Made by a program: the position numbers and the translations under genes. The notes below the pieces were generated by a model that was not told where the DNA came from, did not search any database, and was given only the letters and a program-made list of their open reading frames with translations. 64,000 nt of DNA from sequence record MW812339.1; one strand, written 5' to 3'. Shown here one piece after another: positions 6,642-10,244 of the stretch; position 1 is the first letter of the stretch, and each line of letters starts with the position of its first letter.

Positions 6642-6920
6642 TTTTCCGGGATGGTATTACACATCAACACACCAGGCATGGATAGAAGTTGGCTTCCATC
6701 CCGGAAAAGAGGTCACAGACCGAGGGCTCGTGAAGGCTCGATGGATAAGCGTCAATAAAAACCCTTTCAGCCTCTGGTCTGTATTAGGTCCAAAGTCCCC
6801 GTGCGGAGGAGCAGCCCATGCAGGTAGGCGGCAATTGACACGGAGACTAAGGATAGGTTTTCGTGTTACCCTGACCGGATGAATGGATGTCTTCGGAACG
6901 TCTTCAGGATAGGGTAACAC
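6642..6920 (-). ncRNA. Four tandem 55-70 nt stem-closed structured units (ncRNA candidates)
   Basis: Closing stems 6642-54/6696-6708 (13 bp perfect), 6715-25/6771-82, 6794-6803/6839-48, 6863-72/6911-20 (10 bp perfect); no credible ORF. Confidence 0.5.
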
Positions 6921-6925
6921 AAAAG

Positions 6926-7030
6926 TGGTGCTGTGTACTGGGGACTCGAACCCCAGGAACCCTTAGGGTGTTCAGTGGTGAGCTTTTACCTCACGACCTA
7001 CTTAGGTTTGGCCACTTCCTTACACACAGC
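6926..7030 (-). ncRNA. Non-canonical tRNA-like RNA, 105 nt, encoded CCA
   Basis: GCTGTGTG/TACACAGC acceptor, type-II-like D arm, GGTTCGAGTCC T arm, long variable arm, extended bulged anticodon arm, ACCA end. Confidence 0.7.
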
Positions 7031-7039
7031 ATTGTAATG

Positions 7040-7112
7040 CGACTCTGGCAGGACTTGAACCTGCGACATATGGATTAACAGTCCACCGTTCTACCGACTG
7101 AACTACAGAGTC
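7040..7112 (-). tRNA. trnN: tRNA-Asn(GUU)
   Basis: Canonical cloverleaf GACTCTG/CAGAGTC, loop CTGTTAA, T loop TTCAAGT; CCA not encoded. Confidence 0.95.
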
Positions 7113-7120
7113 CTAATAGG

Positions 7121-7195
7121 CGAGCACCGAGCGGGAATCGAACCCGCGAATATCCGATTATGAGTCGGGTGTTAACCAGCTTAACAGCCGGGCTC
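7121..7195 (-). tRNA. tRNA with CAU anticodon (Ile2-like loop) and irregular acceptor stem
   Basis: Loop CTCATAA in CCCGA/TCGGA stem, T arm GCGGG-TTCGATT-CCCGC; acceptor GAGCCCGG/TCGGTGCTC has an extra pair and a bulge; G discriminator. Confidence 0.75.
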
Positions 7196-7196
7196 T

Positions 7197-7261
7197 TGTC
7201 CTTGATGGATTTGAACCATCCTCGTCATTTGACTGACGACCCCAGACCGACCGGGAAAGAC
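7197..7261 (-). ncRNA. Minimal tRNA-like element, 65 nt
   Basis: Intact T arm GATGG-TTCAAAT-CCATC, 6-bp acceptor GTCTTT/AAGGAC, 6-bp anticodon-like stem with 6-nt loop GTCAAA, shortened D arm. Confidence 0.55.
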
Positions 7262-7265
7262 CATT

Positions 7266-7355
7266 GTGGGGCGAGGGAACGTCCAGGCTTCCGCCCAGAG
7301 ACATGGGGTGCGAATCCGTCATGTCTGTCATCACTGATGGTGACAACGCTCCCAC
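7266..7355 (-). ncRNA. Four-way-junction structured RNA candidate, 90 nt (not a tRNA)
   Basis: Closing stem GTGGGAGCG/CGCCCCAC; arms TGTCA/TGACA, GACATG/CATGTC, TCTGGGC-GGAA-GCCTGGA (GNRA loop). Confidence 0.55.
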
Positions 7356-7359
7356 TGTT

Positions 7360-7440
7360 TGGCTCCGTGATGTGGAGTTGAACCACACTTCTCTCTAGCC
7401 GGTGGAGACGTAAGAGAATCTAAGCCGACTTAGTCACGGC
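7360..7440 (-). ncRNA. Non-canonical tRNA-like RNA, 81 nt, encoded CCA
   Basis: GCCGTGA/TCACGGA acceptor (G1-A72 mismatch), GCCA end, T arm TGTGG-TTCAACT-CCACA, 5-bp D stem with 4-nt loop, elongated bulged anticodon arm. Confidence 0.65.
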
Positions 7441-7448
7441 AATACGGT

Positions 7449-7518
7449 CGTCGGTTATGGGATTCTAACCCACCTAGTCTGGTCGCGAGCCCAGTGCATC
7501 ACAGTTTTGCTTACCGAC
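7449..7518 (-). ncRNA. Degenerate tRNA (CGC-like anticodon, 8-nt loop, mutated T loop)
   Basis: GTCGGT/ACCGAC acceptor, GCA/TGC D stem, CTGG/CCAG stem with loop GCTCGCGA, T loop TTAGAAT. Confidence 0.55.
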
Positions 7519-7587
7519 ATGGAAATAGAAGGAGTAGGCGTGTAACGACGCCTCGTGTTAGTTGCTCGTCCGTAGACGCTACCCTTA

Positions 7588-7660
7588 GGGCATCCTGGTG
7601 AGGAGTCGAACCTCAACCGTTTCCTGCATAAGCCGGATACGGTGTTCCACAACCCAGGCG
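7588..7660 (-). ncRNA. Non-canonical tRNA-like RNA with extended anticodon arm
   Basis: T arm TGAGG-TTCGACT-CCTCA, acceptor CGCCTGG/CCAGGATG with bulge, 3-bp D stem, long CGT..TCC/GGA..ACG arm. Confidence 0.55.
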
Positions 7661-7665
7661 ACTGA

Positions 7666-7815
7666 AGTCGTACCCCTAAGGCTCTCCTTAGGAAAAGGGT
7701 GACACCCCTCCGAATTTCACGGAGTTCTCAAGGCTGCACTAGCTGAACGATTTACGAACCGCTGTAAGGCTGCCAGTTATCTTCGCTGCTCATTGGCGGC
7801 GAGTAACCAGTGTCA
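7666..7815 (-). ncRNA. Multi-hairpin structured element downstream of the HNH gene
   Basis: TGACAC/GTGTCA closing pair, CTCCG/CGGAG and TCGC/GCGA arms, CCTAAGG-AGAG-CCTTAGG hairpin. Confidence 0.35.
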
Positions 7816-7821
7816 TTGTTC

Positions 7822-8358
7822 TTAAGCTGCTTTGGCCTTGTGTGTCTTAGAAAGATACCGTGCCGGGTTTTGGCGAATATCCACAATTGTGGAGTGGTGC
7901 ACGCCGTACTTCTCACCAACAGAACGAACCGTGCCATGTTCATTCTCTAATATCTCTCGGACATCAGAACCAGAGAGCTTGATATTTCTCGAACCATCCG
8001 GTGGGACAAACAACCCTTCTTCTATCGCGTGGATAGTATTCTCACGATGCGTTACCCATTCCAGATTGACTGCCCTAGGGTCAGTCTTCTTTCCGTTTTT
8101 GTGGTTTACACACGGTTTGTTTTCTGGATTAGGCACAAAGGCAGTGGCCACTTGGATGTGCGTTTTGAGAACGACGTTTGTTCCTTTTCTTCCACCGACC
8201 TTGGAGATGTGCCCAGGATACCCATTGATTAAGTTCTGACGCACAGGTCTGTTGCTGCGTTTTGAGAACATAACACCATCTTCATTAACTAGAAAATGGT
8301 CTGGGCAACTCACACAGTCTTTCCACTCGCCGGCTGGAAGGTTTAACTCTTTACTCAT
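7822..8358 (-). CDS. Free-standing HNH homing endonuclease (NUMOD4-like N-terminus, HNH_3-type core)
   Basis: VNHKNGKKTDPRAVNLEWVTHRENTIHA matches the HNH_3 pattern; C-terminal HTH-like segment. Confidence 0.9.
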   Translation of the reverse strand: MSKELNLPAGEWKDCVSCPDHFLVNEDGVMFSKRSNRPVRQNLINGYPGHISKVGGRKGTNVVLKTHIQVATAFVPNPENKPCVNHKNGKKTDPRAVNLEWVTHRENTIHAIEEGLFVPPDGSRNIKLSGSDVREILENEHGTVRSVGEKYGVHHSTIVDIRQNPARYLSKTHKAKAA

Positions 8359-8404: not shown

Positions 8405-8421
8405 CGAGATTTAATAGGTAT

Positions 8422-8504
8422 TGGGGAAGGGTGGATTTGAACCACCGAAGGCCGAAGCCGACAGATTTACAGTCTGTTCCATTTAACCGCTCTGGAACTT
8501 CCCC
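8422..8504 (-). tRNA. trnY: tRNA-Tyr(GUA)
   Basis: GGGGAAG/CTTCCCC acceptor, loop CTGTAAA, long variable arm with UUCG loop, T loop TTCAAAT. Confidence 0.95.
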
Positions 8505-8510
8505 TGAAAG

Positions 8511-9230
8511 GGTGCCGGTGCATCCCAGCTTACGTTCGGCGCTTTCAGCTCCCTCGGGCTTATTAGCAATGAACACTTACCGGGCGCACCGACATATACC
8601 ACAGTAACCTCGTTGGAAGTCACTCTGGTATTGCTCGTTGCATACTACTGTGTTTACACGTAAATGATTTAGCGAGTGCCTATTAATTATATTAATTAAC
8701 CTAAATTAAGAATGAGGGTGATGGACTTCTTCTTCTGAGCCAGGGTATCCCCCGGTCTTAGCGTCTCCAAGCACCACCCTCTTTCACATTACGCATTGGT
8801 AGCTCTCTTGACTACCGGTGGCCGTTGCCACCCTAACACTGGGAACCTAATCCCATTCGGTCATCAGATTGTAGTTTACAGGCGTAGCGAGTCGGCTTAA
8901 TGGGCCGGTGCTTGCCTGTCCGATTTGGACGGTTGTCGTGGTGACGCTAGTCTGTAATCGGGTCCCTTGCGGGTAAACCCATCGCCTGTAACTCGAACGT
9001 GACTAAATACCCAGAACCGCCAACCAGCGAAGAGCTGGCTAATGAGTCTGAATATTTCACGCATAATCATCTCTCGTATCGAATGAGGTCATGACCGGTC
9101 AGATACCCAGCAACGTGAACGCCCTGGTCTTTTGTGTATCTGGCTGCTACGGATTTAGGGGTGCACCGTAGGTCTACGCTGCGTTACAACTGCTACCGGC
9201 CCATGTGGGACATCAACCCACACAGCAATC
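8511..9230 (-). ncRNA. Run of structured ncRNA candidates upstream of tRNA-Tyr
   Basis: Units 8511-8590, 8596-8631, 8714-8781, 8807-8856, 8876-8991 (GCAA tetraloop), 9093-9174; mismatches on plus strand become G-U pairs on minus strand. Confidence 0.5.
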
Positions 9231-9292
9231 AGAAGGTTCACCAAAAGCCCGTCAATCCCAACCACAGGACCACCGGTTACAACAAAGAGGGT

Positions 9293-9310
9293 GGTGGGCC
9301 GAAGCCCACC
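9293..9310 (-). terminator. UUCG hairpin after small ORF (terminator or processing stem)
   Basis: GGTGGGC-TTCG-GCCCACC; U-tract weak. Confidence 0.5.
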
Positions 9311-9312
9311 GT

Positions 9313-9555
9313 TTAGCCAGCATTGAACGATTCATGAACGACGGTCCCAGCAGGAAAGTGCGTGGTACCAACCAGAGTGGCGGTCAGGGTTAACCCTTCA
9401 TCCCAGCGCTCTTGTGGTTCCCATCGGCAGTCCTTCCAATGACCACGGTCGGGCGGAATTGCACACGCAGCTTGCTCCGAGGGAGCCGCCACGATTATGG
9501 AATCAAATTCGTCATACCCGATATCGTCAGTTCGTTCTAGCAGATACAGATTCAT
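9313..9555 (-). CDS. Hypothetical protein, 80 aa
   Basis: GGAG SD before ATG 9555 (MNLYLLERTDDIGYDEFD). Confidence 0.7.
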   Translation of the reverse strand: MNLYLLERTDDIGYDEFDSIIVAAPSEQAACAIPPDRGHWKDCRWEPQERWDEGLTLTATLVGTTHFPAGTVVHESFNAG

Positions 9556-9619
9556 GATGTTCTCCAACAGTTGACAAATCTGTGTCTTCTGTGTTGAACG
9601 TGAACCTGTTGGCCAAATG

Positions 9620-9695
9620 TGGCAGGGGCACAAGGATTCGAACCTTGGACACCCGGTTTTGGAGACCGGTGCTCTGCCAGCTGAGCTATGCCCCT
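9620..9695 (-). tRNA. trnW: tRNA-Trp(CCA), CCA end encoded
   Basis: Canonical cloverleaf AGGGGCA/TGCCCCT, loop CTCCAAA, GCCA end. Confidence 0.97.
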
Positions 9696-9704
9696 AAAAA
9701 TCTT

Positions 9705-10244
9705 TTACTGGTCCAGGTAGCGGAACAGTTTTCTTCGTGATGGGTCTTCAGGTTGTAACCCGAGGTCAAGTTCCTGAATCTCACCACCGCTGTTGATATC
9801 GTAACGGATTGCGACTTTCACCGCATCCGTAGCAGAGACACCTGCAGCCATTGCACCGATGGCGAATTCGCAACCGCTGCCGACTGCCATAGGCGGTTCG
9901 ACTTTCGCAATCCATGGAACGGCTTTCTCGACTTCCTGGCCACCTGTGTAAACTTCACCATCAACGGTGATAACCAGGTAAGACATCGAGATACCTTCCG
10001 GCCAACGAGTGTGGGCTGCAAGGCCCATTGTGTCGCCGTGACCGGCCAGAACATTGCGCAGAATCTGTTGGGATTCGATACCGCCAGCAACGCCAAACGC
10101 GATTGCTTGCTTGCCATCAACGAACCAGGTCTCGCCTTCCGGACACTTGAAGATTTTCTCAGTGCGGAGGTCGAGGCGATACTGCGCTTGAGTCATCTGG
10201 CTGTCAGATGCCAGAGATACACCGTCAAAAGCAATCGTGGTCAT
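9705..10244 (-). CDS. HslV/proteasome-beta-like Ntn hydrolase (putative threonine peptidase)
   Basis: N-terminal MTTIAFDG..LASDSQ, K near residue 30, and AVGSGCEFAIGAM (GSG motif). Confidence 0.75.
   Translation of the reverse strand: MTTIAFDGVSLASDSQMTQAQYRLDLRTEKIFKCPEGETWFVDGKQAIAFGVAGGIESQQILRNVLAGHGDTMGLAAHTRWPEGISMSYLVITVDGEVYTGGQEVEKAVPWIAKVEPPMAVGSGCEFAIGAMAAGVSATDAVKVAIRYDINSGGEIQELDLGLQPEDPSRRKLFRYLDQ

What the first reader, a model, noticed from the sequence alone, without database searches (positions are those of the whole stretch)
6926..7660. Array of non-canonical tRNA-like genes with intact acceptor/T-arm elbows but rebuilt anticodon arms
Seen: five tRNA-shaped genes (6926-7030, 7197-7261, 7360-7440, 7449-7518, 7588-7660) are interleaved with tRNA-Asn and a CAU tRNA, with spacers from 1 to about 70 nt. 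All five keep a T arm and acceptor stem, and two encode CCA. Their anticodon arms are lengthened and bulged, or carry 6- or 8-nt loops. Random decay would also erode the T and acceptor stems, so the one-sided change suggests selection. Inference: these may be non-decoding RNAs, for example decoys for tRNA-cleaving defence toxins, synthetase or EF-Tu ligands, or RNase P/Z punctuation marks that cut the polycistronic RNA into units.
Basis: partly seen in the sequence, partly recalled or inferred. Interest (0 to 1): 0.85.

Follow-up and report, generated by a model that had tools for sequence, protein, structure and literature searches.

The report
Conserved non-decoding tRNA-like RNA array
A jumbo Erwinia phage carries, inside its tRNA gene cluster, a row of tRNA-shaped RNAs that cannot read codons yet are kept intact by selection, and one of them is part of a widespread phage RNA family that no database lists; what any of them does is unknown.

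Summary
The window is Erwinia phage pEa_SNUABM_29 (Seoulvirus). The five tRNA-shaped elements exist at the stated coordinates on the minus strand.

They are not decaying pseudogenes. Each has homologues in other jumbo-phage genera, and substitutions in the stems are compensatory, while the central "anticodon" loops drift in length and sequence.
- B: all 120 stem cells pair; the central loop is 6, 7 or 8 nt.
- C: 10 of 27 pairs are compensatory.
- A and D: compensatory changes in the acceptor, and in the T stem (A) or central stem (D).

In one relative the unit in B's slot has its anticodon stem capped by a UUCG tetraloop.

The two long "spacers" are also structured RNAs. Element E is not a gene of its own. 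It is the tRNA-like decoration at the tip of helix P1 of a ~160-nt RNA with a conserved four-helix core. That family occurs in 43 viral contigs, 114 metagenome stretches and about 68 named phages, almost never in cellular genomes, and is absent from Rfam 15. Covariation is overwhelming and was confirmed on independent sequences.

Across 12 related arrays, 36 such extra units were found against about 1 expected by chance.

The closest precedents are T4 RNAC/RNAD, whose function is still unknown. Function here is inferred, not shown.

The parts
6926..7030 (-). Unit A. tRNA-like RNA of 105 nt. It has an acceptor stem GCUGUGU/ACACAGC, discriminator A and CCA, a D arm of the type-II kind (GUGGCCAAA), a long variable arm (ACCC-UAA-GGGU), a 6-bp T stem and a central arm of about 11 positions.
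   Evidence: Sequence and MFE fold, z = -2.3. Homologues in pEa_SNUABM_43/42 and pSal-SNUABM-04 are 96% identical and sit at a different place in the array with unrelated flanks. The interior ~70 nt is identical. Compensatory changes occur in the acceptor (GCCGGU/ACCGGC, including a paired 1-bp length change) and in the T stem (CUGAGG/CCUCAG).
7039..7112 (-). Canonical tRNA-Asn (GUU).
   Evidence: ARAGORN and Rfam, 75.9 bits. It lacks the encoded CCA that its orthologues have.
7121..7195 (-). CAU tRNA (GenBank: tRNA-Ile2(cat)), with a 1-nt bulge in the 3' acceptor strand.
   Evidence: Rfam gives 33.8 bits for model positions 10-63 only. ARAGORN does not call it. The alignment with relatives shows the extra nucleotide. 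GenBank annotation.
7197..7261 (-). Unit B. Compact 65-nt cloverleaf with a 6-bp acceptor, a 4-bp D stem with a 5-nt loop, a 5-bp central stem with a variable loop, a 1-nt variable region and a canonical T arm. It lies 1 nt upstream of the CAU tRNA.
   Evidence: Homologues occur in ChrisDB, SNUABM_9/4/8, Stratton/phiEaH2 and Caitlin. All 120 stem cells pair and 5 pairs have double-sided changes, against 0-2 in slid registers. The loop is 6, 7 or 8 nt. MFE z = -3.4.
7275..7353 (-). Four-way-junction RNA with an 8-bp closing stem and three arms, without a canonical T loop.
   Evidence: Conserved in SPAsTU and MET_P1, with compensatory changes in arm 2 and in the closing stem. MFE z = -2.6.
7360..7440 (-). 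Unit C. tRNA-like RNA with an acceptor stem, a D-like hairpin (CUAAG-UCGG-CUUAG), a central 6-7 bp stem with a ~16-nt loop, a canonical T arm and a 3' G-CCA.
   Evidence: Homologues in pSal-SNUABM-04 and pEa_SNUABM_43 have almost entirely different stem sequences but the same architecture, and end in A-CCA. 10 of 27 pairs are compensatory.
7449..7518 (-). Unit D. tRNA-like RNA with a 6-bp acceptor plus an A-A mismatch, a 3-bp D stem, a 4-bp central stem with a conserved 8-nt loop GCUCGCGA, and a T loop UUAGAAU.
   Evidence: Rfam tRNA 24.1 bits, below threshold. Homologues in pEa_SNUABM_6, Kwan/Wellington and five metagenomic jumbo-phage contigs have an identical interior and unrelated flanks. 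All stem cells pair and 3 pairs have double-sided changes, against 0 in slid registers.
7529..7689 (-). Member of the 'E family', a phage RNA with a conserved four-helix core: P0 - AGC - P1 - [insert] - P1' - GGUAGC - P2 - GAGCAAC UAACACGA - P3 (GGCG/CGCC) - UA - P0'.
   Evidence: Architecture parsed in 40 distinct members. 95.6% of cells pair; 167 double-sided changes against 53 in shuffles and 12-28 in slid registers. The CM hits the window once. The MFE fold reproduces P0-P3, z = -3.06. No Rfam match.
7591..7673 (-). It comprises a small hairpin, a 5-bp acceptor-like stem CCUGG/CCAGG, irregular inner arms and a canonical T arm UGAGG-UUCGACU-CCUCA.
   Evidence: The acceptor-like and T stems covary among the window, Machinavirus and Moabitevirus copies (CCUAG/CUAGG, UCCGG/CCGGA; UGGGG/CCCCA, UAGGG/CCCUA). 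Moabite has lost half of the T arm but keeps the core.
7529..7590 (-). 3' module of the E-family RNA (P1', GGUAGC, P2 hairpin, the invariant joining strand AGCAACUAACACGA, P3, P0').
   Evidence: It matches very different phages (CBB, fHe-Yen9-04, Wc4, ChuuTotoro, Psa21). Invariant columns are listed.
7700..7815 (-). Unit G. A further conserved structured unit with a closing stem (GACAC/GUGUC) and a T-loop-like hairpin CUCCG-UGAAAUU-CGGAG.
   Evidence: Found by the detector. Homologues lie in SPAsTU (between tRNA-Glu and tRNA-Asp) and in pSal-SNUABM-04. Not analysed further.
7822..8358 (-). HNH homing endonuclease gene inside the tRNA cluster. It is context and a possible driver of cassette shuffling.
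   Evidence: Pfam HNH_3, E = 4e-7.
8422..8504 (-). Canonical tRNA-Tyr (GUA), in the upstream part of the same array.
   Evidence: ARAGORN and Rfam, 56.1 bits.

Best explanation
The stretch 6926-7815 (minus strand) is one co-oriented array of about ten RNA units, probably co-transcribed. Two are tRNAs that look able to decode (Asn, and a CAU tRNA with a slightly aberrant acceptor stem). The other eight are stable structured RNAs that do not decode: A, B, C, D, F, G and the E-family RNA.

SHOWN
- Units A-D and the insert of E keep the 'top half' of a tRNA: an acceptor-type helix stacked on a T arm with a T loop.
- Their stems are held by purifying selection, seen as compensatory substitutions in other phage genera.
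- Their central arm is rebuilt. In B it is free to change loop length and sequence, and the unit in B's slot in a relative is capped by a tetraloop.
- The units behave as discrete cassettes, with exact tRNA-type boundaries and unrelated flanks.
- E is a decoration on a separate, widespread phage RNA with an invariant four-helix core.

INFERRED
- Because the retained part is what RNase P, 3'-end trimming and the CCA-adding enzyme recognise, the units are cut out of the precursor and stabilised like tRNAs. T4 RNAC/RNAD and M. smegmatis YrlA are precedents.
- They then act in trans as top-half tRNA mimics. That is, they are bound by host or defence proteins that read the acceptor, T arm or elbow rather than the anticodon.
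- The partner and the benefit to the phage are unknown.
- For the E family, the conserved core is the functional module (a protein- or ligand-binding fold). The tRNA-like insert supplies processing, stability or recruitment.
For: Identity and context: the window is 100% identical to pEa_SNUABM_29, and relatives carry 8-13 tRNAs at the syntenic site.

Selection on structure:
- B: all 120 stem cells pair; 5 pairs with double-sided changes.
- D: all stem cells pair; 3 double-sided pairs against 0 in slid registers.
- C: 10 of 27 pairs compensatory across three homologues.
- A: compensatory changes in the acceptor and T stem around an identical interior.
- F: compensatory changes in one arm.

Non-decoding:
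- B's loop is 6, 7 or 8 nt and varies in sequence.
- The MET_P1 unit in B's slot has a UUCG-capped stem, and the SPAsTU version carries a large insertion there.
- A has a central arm of about 11 positions; C has a loop of about 16 nt.

Not coding: indels in B's loop are not multiples of three.

Generality: 36 extra units in 12 arrays against 1.1 in shuffles.

E family:
- 95.6% of cells pair; 167 double-sided changes against 53 in shuffles.
- Independent motif-anchored test on 28 new members: P0 98.8% and P1 97.4% paired, against 72% and 64% with partners permuted.
- 43 viral loci, 114 metagenome stretches and only 9 cellular-genome hits.
- All 224 neighbouring tRNAs are on the same strand.
- 24 of 42 inserts carry a canonical T arm. 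The usual form adds a 7-bp acceptor, which together make the RNase P recognition module.

Polycistronic precursor: no promoter or terminator was found inside the array.

Precedents: T4 RNAC has a T arm and an acceptor-like end, and its role is unknown (PMC3014915, PMC9697503). The tRNA-like module of M. smegmatis YrlA is cut by RNase P and receives CCA (PMC4201824).
Against: - There is no expression, end-mapping or charging data, so processing and stability are inferred only.
- A, C and D rest on 3-6 sequences that are 93-97% identical inside. High identity with unrelated flanks may reflect recent cassette transfer rather than long purifying selection. For D alone, the chance that its three changed pairs stay complementary is about 0.05.
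- No partner was found: no protein family recurs near the E family.
- The window's E has only a 5-bp internal acceptor-like stem, so RNase P cleavage there is doubtful.
- This array does show some erosion: a bulge in the CAU acceptor, and lost CCA on Asn and Tyr. It holds only 3-4 canonical tRNAs against 8-13 in relatives, so relaxed selection on part of the array cannot be excluded.
- D's 8-nt loop is conserved, which would also fit a decoding or other sequence-specific role.
Confidence: 0.55

Rival explanations
1. Cis-acting maturation modules. The units work only within the precursor transcript, as RNase P/E entry points or folding chaperones that make the neighbouring real tRNAs (for example the CAU tRNA 1 nt downstream of B) mature correctly, as in T4 dimeric tRNA precursors. 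After cleavage they are waste.
For: - A unit of the B type lies 1-2 nt upstream of the CAU tRNA in every related array examined, even where its interior is unrelated (SNUABM_43, MET_P1, SPAsTU).
- There is no internal promoter or terminator.
- E-family RNAs often sit 8-22 nt upstream of a tRNA.
- A recurrent spacer motif, AACA / ACA(A/G)UGG, follows many units.
Against: - Interior sequences are more conserved than structure alone would require: about 70 nt identical in A, the loop GCUCGCGA in D, and B's D arm and central stem.
- About 40% of E-family loci have no tRNA nearby.
- A sits at the end of the array in the window but in the middle in relatives.
Confidence: 0.2
2. Unusual but genuine decoders. 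Some units, especially D with its conserved 8-nt loop and perhaps the window's B, would be aminoacylated tRNAs that read special codons, quadruplets or stop codons.
For: - D's loop sequence is invariant in six lineages.
- D nearly reaches the Rfam tRNA threshold (24.1 against 29 bits).
- Natural tRNAs with expanded loops and odd cloverleaves exist (PMC5389517).
Against: - B's loop length and sequence are not conserved.
- D and B have no U at the position equivalent to U33; the second loop base is C in D and G in B (sequence).
- The acceptor-plus-T stack is 11 bp in B and 13-14 bp in A, not 12.
- A, C and the MET_P1 unit cannot present an anticodon.
Confidence: 0.08
3. Ordinary tRNA pseudogenes. 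These would be relics of the fuller tRNA set seen in relatives, decaying neutrally, as tRNAscan 'pseudo' calls in phage genomes are usually read (PMC3185647).
For: - The window phage has only 3-4 canonical tRNAs where relatives have 8-13.
- The CAU tRNA has a bulged acceptor, and Asn and Tyr lack the CCA of their orthologues.
- None of the five passes a standard tRNA detector.
Against: - Every stem substitution in B and D preserves pairing.
- A, C and F have compensatory changes.
- The homologues in other genera are equally non-canonical, so these are not decayed copies of intact orthologues.
- B is 94% identical to ChrisDB where the genuine tRNA-Asn is 75%.
- The units keep exact boundaries with unrelated flanks.
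Confidence: 0.05
4. DNA-level or coding features. The conserved blocks would be homing-endonuclease target sites, recombination sites or small ORFs, as some relatives annotate, rather than RNAs.
For: - An HNH endonuclease gene lies in the cluster.
- Relatives annotate hypothetical CDSs over B and E.
- ORFs of 53-87 aa overlap the region.
Against: - Compensatory base-pair changes are strand-symmetric evidence of a folded nucleic acid, not of a protein or a protein-binding site.
- Indels of 1-2 nt in B and variable inserts in E break any reading frame.
- The units share the strand of all tRNAs.
Confidence: 0.03

Closest known systems
Bacteriophage T4 RNAC and RNAD (species 1 and 2 stable RNAs)
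   Same: They are encoded inside the phage tRNA gene cluster on the tRNA strand. RNAC ends in a canonical T arm (CCGGG-UUCGAAU-CCCGG) closed by a terminal acceptor-like helix, with non-tRNA helices in place of the D and anticodon arms. They do not decode, and their role is unknown after 50 years (PMC3014915, PMC9697503).
   Different: There is no sequence or CM similarity to any unit here. T4 has two such RNAs, whereas this array has about eight. Nothing like the E-family core is present in the T4 region.
YrlA / bacterial Y RNAs (Rfam RF02553)
   Same: These are modular RNAs in which a tRNA-like domain (T arm, D arm, acceptor-like stem) is mounted on a helix formed by the 5' and 3' ends. The tRNA-like module of M. 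smegmatis YrlA is cut by RNase P and receives CCA (PMC4201824). One E-family member (L029) even has the permuted T-arm-then-D-arm order. Some jumbo phages encode Ro60/TROVE (PMC7824862).
   Different: - There is no RF02553 match to the E unit.
- The GNCGAAN0-1G Ro-binding motif is present in only 5 of 42 members, at inconsistent positions, which is close to chance; the window copy is not among the five.
- No rsr/TROVE gene lies among the neighbours.
- The E family has an extra invariant module (P2, AGCAACUAACACGA, P3) that Y RNAs lack.
'Pseudo-tRNA' / 'tRNA-OTHER' calls in phage genomes (e.g. Felix O1, phiEa21-4)
   Same: They are the same kind of object as seen by annotation pipelines. The phiEa21-4 'tRNA-OTHER' is exactly the tRNA-like insert of its E-family RNA.
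   Different: The usual reading is a defective tRNA (PMC3185647). Here the units are structurally conserved with covariation, and the flagged piece in phiEa21-4 is only part of a 177-nt RNA.
Phage tRNAs that evade tRNA-targeting defences (anticodon-loop variants; T5 tRNAs against PARIS or retrons)
   Same: These are phage tRNA-cluster genes whose anticodon region departs from the host's while the rest of the tRNA is kept, interpreted as counter-defence (PMC10264068, PMC11555353, PMC12409363).
   Different: Those remain functional decoders with 7-nt loops. The units here have lost a usable anticodon arm altogether, so they could act only as decoys or ligands, not as replacements.
GOLLD and ROOL large phage RNAs
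   Same: They are structured RNAs of unknown function, typical of phages and often next to tRNA genes. One E-family contig also carries GOLLD.
   Different: They are much larger (400-800 nt) and show no sequence or structure similarity. The E-family core is about 85 nt.

Membership tests
Canonical tRNA (Rfam RF00005 / ARAGORN) | Scores above the detector threshold (Rfam gathering score 29 bits; ARAGORN default). | tested here: not met
   A, C and E have no match at E <= 10. D scores 24.1 bits and B 19.1 bits (as tRNA-Sec, threshold 47). ARAGORN default calls none of them.
Canonical tRNA (Rfam RF00005 / ARAGORN) | A 5-bp anticodon stem with a 7-nt loop and U33. | tested here: not met
   A has about 11 positions with 2 mismatches. 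B's loop is 6, 7 or 8 nt. C's loop is about 16 nt. D has a 4-bp stem and an 8-nt loop, a register supported by covariation.
Canonical tRNA (Rfam RF00005 / ARAGORN) | A T arm with a T loop, closed directly by an acceptor stem. | tested here: met
   All five have this. The stack length departs from 7+5: B is 6+5, A is 7-8+6, and E is 5+5 and internal.
Neutral tRNA pseudogene | Substitutions fall on stems without regard to pairing, with no covariation among relatives. | tested here: not met
   100% of stem cells pair in B and D, with 5 and 3 double-sided pairs. C has 10 of 27 compensatory pairs. A and F also have compensatory changes.
Neutral tRNA pseudogene | Orthologues in relatives are intact tRNAs of a definite isotype. 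| tested here: not met
   Homologues in Machinavirus, Erskinevirus, Wellingtonvirus and Seoulvirus are equally non-canonical, unannotated and not called by ARAGORN.
T4 RNAC/RNAD-type stable RNAs | Encoded in a phage tRNA cluster on the tRNA strand, with a T arm and a terminal acceptor-like helix but a non-tRNA interior. | tested here: met
T4 RNAC/RNAD-type stable RNAs | Sequence or profile homology to rnaC or rnaD. | tested here: not met
   No T4-type phage appears among the blastn hits for any unit. CM R1 has no hit in the T4 tRNA region.
T4 RNAC/RNAD-type stable RNAs | Accumulates as a discrete processed RNA during infection. | not testable with these tools
   No transcriptome data were available.
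YrlA / Y RNA | Match to RF02553 and the GNCGAAN0-1G motif in the terminal stem. | tested here: not met
   The only RF02553 hit is a 21-bit chance match spanning the Asn and CAU tRNAs. The motif occurs in 5 of 42 E-family members at inconsistent positions, and the window copy is not among them.
YrlA / Y RNA | Encoded next to a Ro60 (rsr/TROVE) gene. | tested here: not met
   None of 10 neighbouring ORFs has a TROVE domain, and no neighbour family recurs. The rest of the phage genome was not examined.
tmRNA | A tRNA-like domain plus a tag reading frame, detected by ARAGORN. | tested here: not met
   ARAGORN reports no tmRNA in the window.
E family (proposed here) | P0 closing helix, AGC, P1, GGUAGC, P2 hairpin, GAGCAAC-UAACACGA, P3 GGCG/CGCC, UA, P0'. 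| tested here: met
   The window copy at 7529-7689 has every element. CM R1 gives 50.6 bits, E = 1e-12. The MFE fold gives the same helices.

The most novel reading that the evidence does not exclude
Two linked claims.

(1) The E family is a new, widespread class of phage structured RNA. Its invariant four-helix core is a specific protein- or ligand-binding, or catalytic, fold. In the common form with a 7-bp acceptor, its tRNA-like insert is excised by RNase P and 3' processing, which leaves a two-piece core held together by P0 and P1.

(2) Non-decoding top-half tRNA mimics are a regular, selected component of large-phage tRNA arrays. They serve as decoys or inhibitors of host immunity proteins that recognise the tRNA acceptor, T arm or elbow (nucleases that target the tRNA tail, acceptor or anticodon arm). 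This would make them an RNA-based counter-defence.
Probability: 0.25. Interest if true: 0.85.

Novelty: new variant of a known kind. Interest (0 to 1): 0.7.

Why it matters
Phage tRNA clusters are usually annotated tRNA by tRNA. Anything a detector rejects is left blank, called 'pseudo', or covered with a hypothetical ORF.

This array shows that the blanks can be dense with RNAs under selection. A phage that has shed most of its real tRNAs still keeps about eight non-decoding structured units.

That puts the 50-year-old question of what T4 RNAC and RNAD are for into a much larger comparative frame. Families, covariation-supported structures and tractable host-phage pairs (phiEa21-4, Salmonella SE5-type phages) are now available.

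The E family in particular is ready for Rfam-style curation and for biochemical work: an ~85-nt core with about 30 invariant nucleotides, and more than 150 loci.

If the mimics turn out to engage tRNA-targeting immune nucleases, they would be a new kind of anti-defence factor made of RNA.

Tried and rejected
- Rfam at gathering and permissive thresholds, on the window, on 14 E-family loci and on the minimal member L033: tRNAs, one unrelated GOLLD and unrelated sub-threshold chance matches only; nothing on the E-family RNA.
- YrlA/Y RNA membership: rejected.
- Homology to T4 rnaC/rnaD: none.
- Bacterial-type short intron in A (ARAGORN -i suggests a 12-nt intron): rejected as biologically implausible, and it is not needed once the extended arm is seen to be conserved.
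- A conserved protein partner near the E family: none, at most 5 of 58 loci share a family.
- 'CCA is special to A and C': rejected after checking that about 90 of 97 canonical tRNAs in the group encode CCA.
- Pattern scan for more A homologues in viral contigs: 0 hits. For B, only already-known phages were found.
- CM-based alignment A7 for counting P0 and P1: rejected because local alignment misplaces the 5' strands when inserts are long. It was replaced by a motif-anchored test.
- Literature searches for the invariant sequence, for SPN3US transcriptomes and for phiEa21-4 tRNA notes: no description of these RNAs.
- Sigma-70 promoter and terminator scan: uninformative, as expected for a phage with its own RNA polymerases.
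Full report
**Identity and setting.** The window matches Erwinia phage pEa_SNUABM_29 (MW812339.1, Seoulvirus, 248.8 kb) at 100% identity; window position equals record position minus 124,000. The finding lies in the phage's tRNA cluster, which reads on the minus strand. GenBank annotates only tRNA-Asn, tRNA-Ile2(cat), tRNA-Tyr and tRNA-Trp there. Relatives in Machinavirus, Erskinevirus, Wellingtonvirus and Seoulvirus carry 8-13 tRNAs at the syntenic site. That made 'relics of a fuller tRNA set' the obvious rival to test.

**The observation.**
- ARAGORN at default settings finds Asn, Tyr and Trp only.
- Rfam adds a partial match to the CAU tRNA (33.8 bits, no acceptor stem). Below threshold it scores D at 24.1 bits and B at 19.1 bits as tRNA-Sec. 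A, C and E get nothing even at E <= 10.
- Read on the minus strand, each of the five elements has a 5-bp T stem with a T loop, closed directly by an acceptor-type stem. A and C end in N-CCA.
- MFE folds give cloverleaf-type structures for A, B, C and D (z = -2.3, -3.4, -2.2, -1.7).
The corrections concern E and the 'spacers', described below.

**Test against decay.** Each element was searched separately against 50,697 phage records and aligned with its homologues.

- **B** occurs in ChrisDB, pEa_SNUABM_9/4/8, Stratton/phiEaH2 and Caitlin. It is always unannotated or lies under a 'hypothetical protein', and it is always 1-2 nt upstream of the CAU tRNA.
  - Across six distinct sequences all 120 stem cells pair.
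  - Five pairs carry changes on both sides (0-2 in slid registers; 0 of 500 shuffles reach this).
  - The D stem runs through G-U, G-C and A-U.
  - The central loop is 8, 8, 6, 7 and 7 nt with different sequences. That rules out both a fixed anticodon and a reading frame.
- **D** occurs in pEa_SNUABM_6, Kwan/Wellington and five metagenomic jumbo-phage contigs, with an identical interior and unrelated flanks. The acceptor (GUCGGU/ACCGAC against AACGGU/ACCGUU) and the central stem (CUGG/CCAG against CUGU/ACAG) change in a compensatory way. This supports a 4-bp stem with a conserved 8-nt loop.
- **A** occurs in pEa_SNUABM_43/42 and pSal-SNUABM-04, at a different position in the array. About 70 interior nucleotides are identical. 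The acceptor is GCUGUGU/ACACAGC in the window and GCCGGU/ACCGGC in relatives, including a paired length change. The T stem is CUGGGG/CCCCAG against CUGAGG/CCUCAG. ACCA is retained.
- **C** has two homologues whose stems are almost entirely different in sequence but identical in architecture. 10 of 27 pairs are compensatory, and both homologues end in A-CCA.
- B is 94% identical to its ChrisDB homologue, whereas the genuine tRNA-Asn of the same two phages is 75% identical.

Neutral decay predicts none of this.

**The 'spacers' are RNAs too.**
- The 98-nt B-C gap holds unit F (7275-7353). It is a four-way junction with an 8-bp closing stem, conserved in SPAsTU and MET_P1, with one arm fully compensated (GACAUG/CAUGUC against AAGUGA/UCACUU).
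- Upstream of E lies unit G (~7700-7815), conserved in SPAsTU and pSal-SNUABM-04.
- The array therefore reads Tyr - HNH ORF - G - E - D - C - F - B - CAU - Asn - A. Spacers from E through A are 1-13 nt, and no promoter or terminator was found inside.
- The ORF at 7822-8358 is an HNH homing endonuclease, like segB in the T4 tRNA region. It may explain why units behave as cassettes that turn up in different subsets of phages and at different positions.

**Element E belongs to a larger RNA family.**
- *How it was found.* The ~160-nt block around E (7529-7689) matches Machinaviruses. It also matches Serratia and Pectobacterium Moabiteviruses. Its 3' part alone matches quite different phages: CBB, Yersinia fHe-Yen9-04, Wc4, ChuuTotoro and Psa21. 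In every case the match lies in unannotated space inside a tRNA cluster.
- *Breadth.* A pattern taken from the invariant part found 43 loci in viral contigs and 114 stretches in metagenomes. Only 9 hits came from the genomes of 185,579 cellular species.
- *Architecture.* All members share P0 - AGC - P1 - [insert of 12-191 nt] - P1' - GGUAGC - P2 - GAGCAAC UAACACGA - P3 (GGCG/CGCC) - UA - P0'.
- *Covariation.* This was measured on a core alignment of 31 members, in which the insert was replaced by its first and last 4 nt only to make the sequences alignable.
  - 95.6% of cells pair, against 70% in shuffles and 33-53% in slid registers.
  - There are 167 double-sided changes, against 53 in shuffles and 12-28 in slid registers.
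  - P1 and P2 are fully paired, with several pair types at nearly every position.
- *Bias control.* My first parse had chosen strands partly by their pairing. I therefore repeated the test on 28 new metagenomic members, locating the strands by sequence motif only. P0 is 98.8% and P1 97.4% paired, against 72% and 64% when partners are permuted.
- *CM searches.* A covariance model finds exactly one copy in the window. It finds none in SPAsTU, Stratton, T4 or the other close relatives. It hits 76 of the metagenomic stretches at E <= 1e-5.
- *Rfam.* Rfam 15 has nothing for the family, even for the minimal 88-nt member at E <= 10.

**What the tRNA-like part of E is.**
- In 24 of 42 distinct members the P1-tip insert contains a canonical T arm. 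In the commonest form this is stacked on a 7-bp acceptor-type stem, with two nucleotides before P1'. That is the full module RNase P recognises.
- In phiEa21-4 that insert is what GenBank calls 'tRNA-OTHER', inside a 177-nt unit that nobody annotated.
- Other members have unrelated inserts or only a 12-14-nt loop. One (L029) has a permuted T-arm-then-D-arm module like YrlA. Moabite has lost half of the T arm but keeps the core.
- The tRNA-like shape is therefore a frequent but dispensable decoration, and the core is the conserved function.
- The window copy has a reduced 5-bp internal stem.

**Context of the E family.**
- All 224 tRNAs in 47 distinct loci lie on the RNA's strand.
- In 20 loci a tRNA follows within 300 nt, often within 8-22 nt. 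About 40% of loci have no tRNA nearby.
- No protein family recurs nearby, so any partner is probably a host factor.

**Generality.** A simple detector was run on 12 related arrays. It requires a 5-bp T stem, a T loop, an acceptor with at least 6 of 7 pairs closing directly on it, and no ARAGORN call.
- It gives 36 extra units, against 1.1 (maximum 4) in shuffled arrays.
- The most telling case is the unit in B's slot in MET_P1. Its acceptor, D arm and T arm are perfect, but the 'anticodon' stem is capped by UUCG. SPAsTU has the same unit with a large insertion at that point.

**Mechanism.** *Shown:* selection on the folded structure, loss of a usable anticodon arm, cassette behaviour, and a distinct conserved core for E. 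*Inferred:*
- The retained acceptor/T-arm half lets host RNase P, 3' trimming and the CCA enzyme excise and stabilise the units from a polycistronic precursor.
- The excised units then act as top-half tRNA mimics on proteins that do not read the anticodon.

I favour trans action over a purely cis role in maturation, for two reasons. Interiors are conserved beyond what structure needs (A, D, and B's D arm). And many E-family RNAs stand apart from tRNAs. The strict B-CAU pairing nevertheless keeps the cis model alive. I had intended to argue from encoded CCA, but about 90 of 97 ordinary tRNAs of these phages encode it, so I dropped that argument.

**Comparison with what is known.**
- The nearest named things are T4 RNAC and RNAD. 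They sit in the tRNA cluster, RNAC has a T arm and an acceptor-like end, and their role is unknown (PMC3014915, PMC9697503). There is no homology to them.
- YrlA Y RNAs share the modular design and the RNase P/CCA precedent (PMC4201824), but their defining motif, Rfam model and rsr linkage are not met.
- Phage genome papers treat such calls as 'pseudo tRNA genes' (PMC3185647).
- A large survey lists tRNA-like candidate RNAs in phages without assigning function (PMC10690425).
- Work on tRNA-targeting immunity and phage tRNAs concerns functional decoders (PMC10264068, PMC11555353).
- I found no description of the E family or of conserved non-decoding units in these arrays. The library searched is incomplete, so this is absence of evidence.

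**Verdict.** The pseudogene reading is rejected. E must be reinterpreted as part of an undescribed, widespread phage RNA. Function remains open. I rate the finding a new variant of a known kind (phage tRNA-like stable RNAs), with interest 0.7.

Noticed in passing
window 7822-8358 (-): An HNH_3 homing endonuclease gene is inserted in the tRNA cluster between tRNA-Tyr and unit G. CBB, Psa21 and fHe-Yen9-04 also have HNH genes next to their E-family RNA or tRNAs. It may drive the cassette-like shuffling of units.
   Followed up: partly
window 7121-7131 (-), within the CAU tRNA 7121-7195: The window's CAU tRNA has one extra nucleotide (a bulge) in the 3' acceptor strand compared with all relatives, and ARAGORN does not call it. 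In ChrisDB and pEa_SNUABM_6/8/9 the orthologue instead carries a long stem-loop insertion after the anticodon arm. One record annotates that version as a 97-nt tRNA-Met.
   Followed up: partly
window 7031-7041 and 8417-8425 (-): The window's tRNA-Asn and tRNA-Tyr lack the encoded 3' CCA that their orthologues in all relatives have. About 90 of 97 canonical tRNAs in this phage group encode CCA.
   Followed up: partly
window 7483-7490 (-): D's conserved 8-nt loop GCUCGCGA contains the self-complementary hexamer UCGCGA. That could allow loop-loop (kissing) dimerisation, or it could be a protein site.
   Followed up: no
window 7354-7359 and 7262-7267 (-); many loci: A recurrent spacer motif follows many tRNAs and units in these arrays: AACA immediately after CCA, and ACA(A/G)UGG just 5' of units B and F. 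It may be a processing signal.
   Followed up: no
window 6863-6920: Immediately downstream of unit A there is a 10-bp inverted repeat (GTGTTACCCT / AGGGTAACAC) enclosing about 38 nt that hold a repeated GTCTTC motif. No U-run follows it. It could be the end of the array transcript or another RNA element.
   Followed up: no
window ~8505-9312 (-), within 8511-9705: About 800 nt between tRNA-Tyr and the small CDS at 9313-9555 have no annotated gene. Yet they are ~82% identical to SPN3US and many Salmonella jumbo phages. No T-arm-type unit and no Rfam family was found there.
   Followed up: no
L004 3079-3333 and 2510-2647; L010 1458-1589: Relatives annotate hypothetical protein genes over these RNAs: pEaSNUABM9_00072 over B, pEaSNUABM9_00076 on the opposite strand over the E-family RNA, and CPT_Moabite_075 over its 5' half. 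These are probably mis-annotations.
   Followed up: partly
L063 2770-2838; L002 3164-3270: The MET_P1 unit in B's slot is a textbook tRNA except that the anticodon stem ends in a UUCG tetraloop. SPAsTU has the same unit with an insertion of about 40 nt at that spot.
   Followed up: partly
L004 1589-1705; L003 (Stratton 'tRNA-Ile(aat)', 120 nt); L004 3418-3497: Further oversized tRNA-like units occur in relatives. They have long insertions between the D and T arms, and one has two T-arm-like hairpins. One is annotated as a 120-nt tRNA-Ile.
   Followed up: no
L027 1814-2183: A GOLLD RNA (206 bits) lies in the same viral contig and tRNA array as an E-family RNA.
   Followed up: no
L115, L127, L130, L142, L043: Some metagenomic and viral contigs carry two E-family copies in tandem, 160-380 nt apart.
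   Followed up: no
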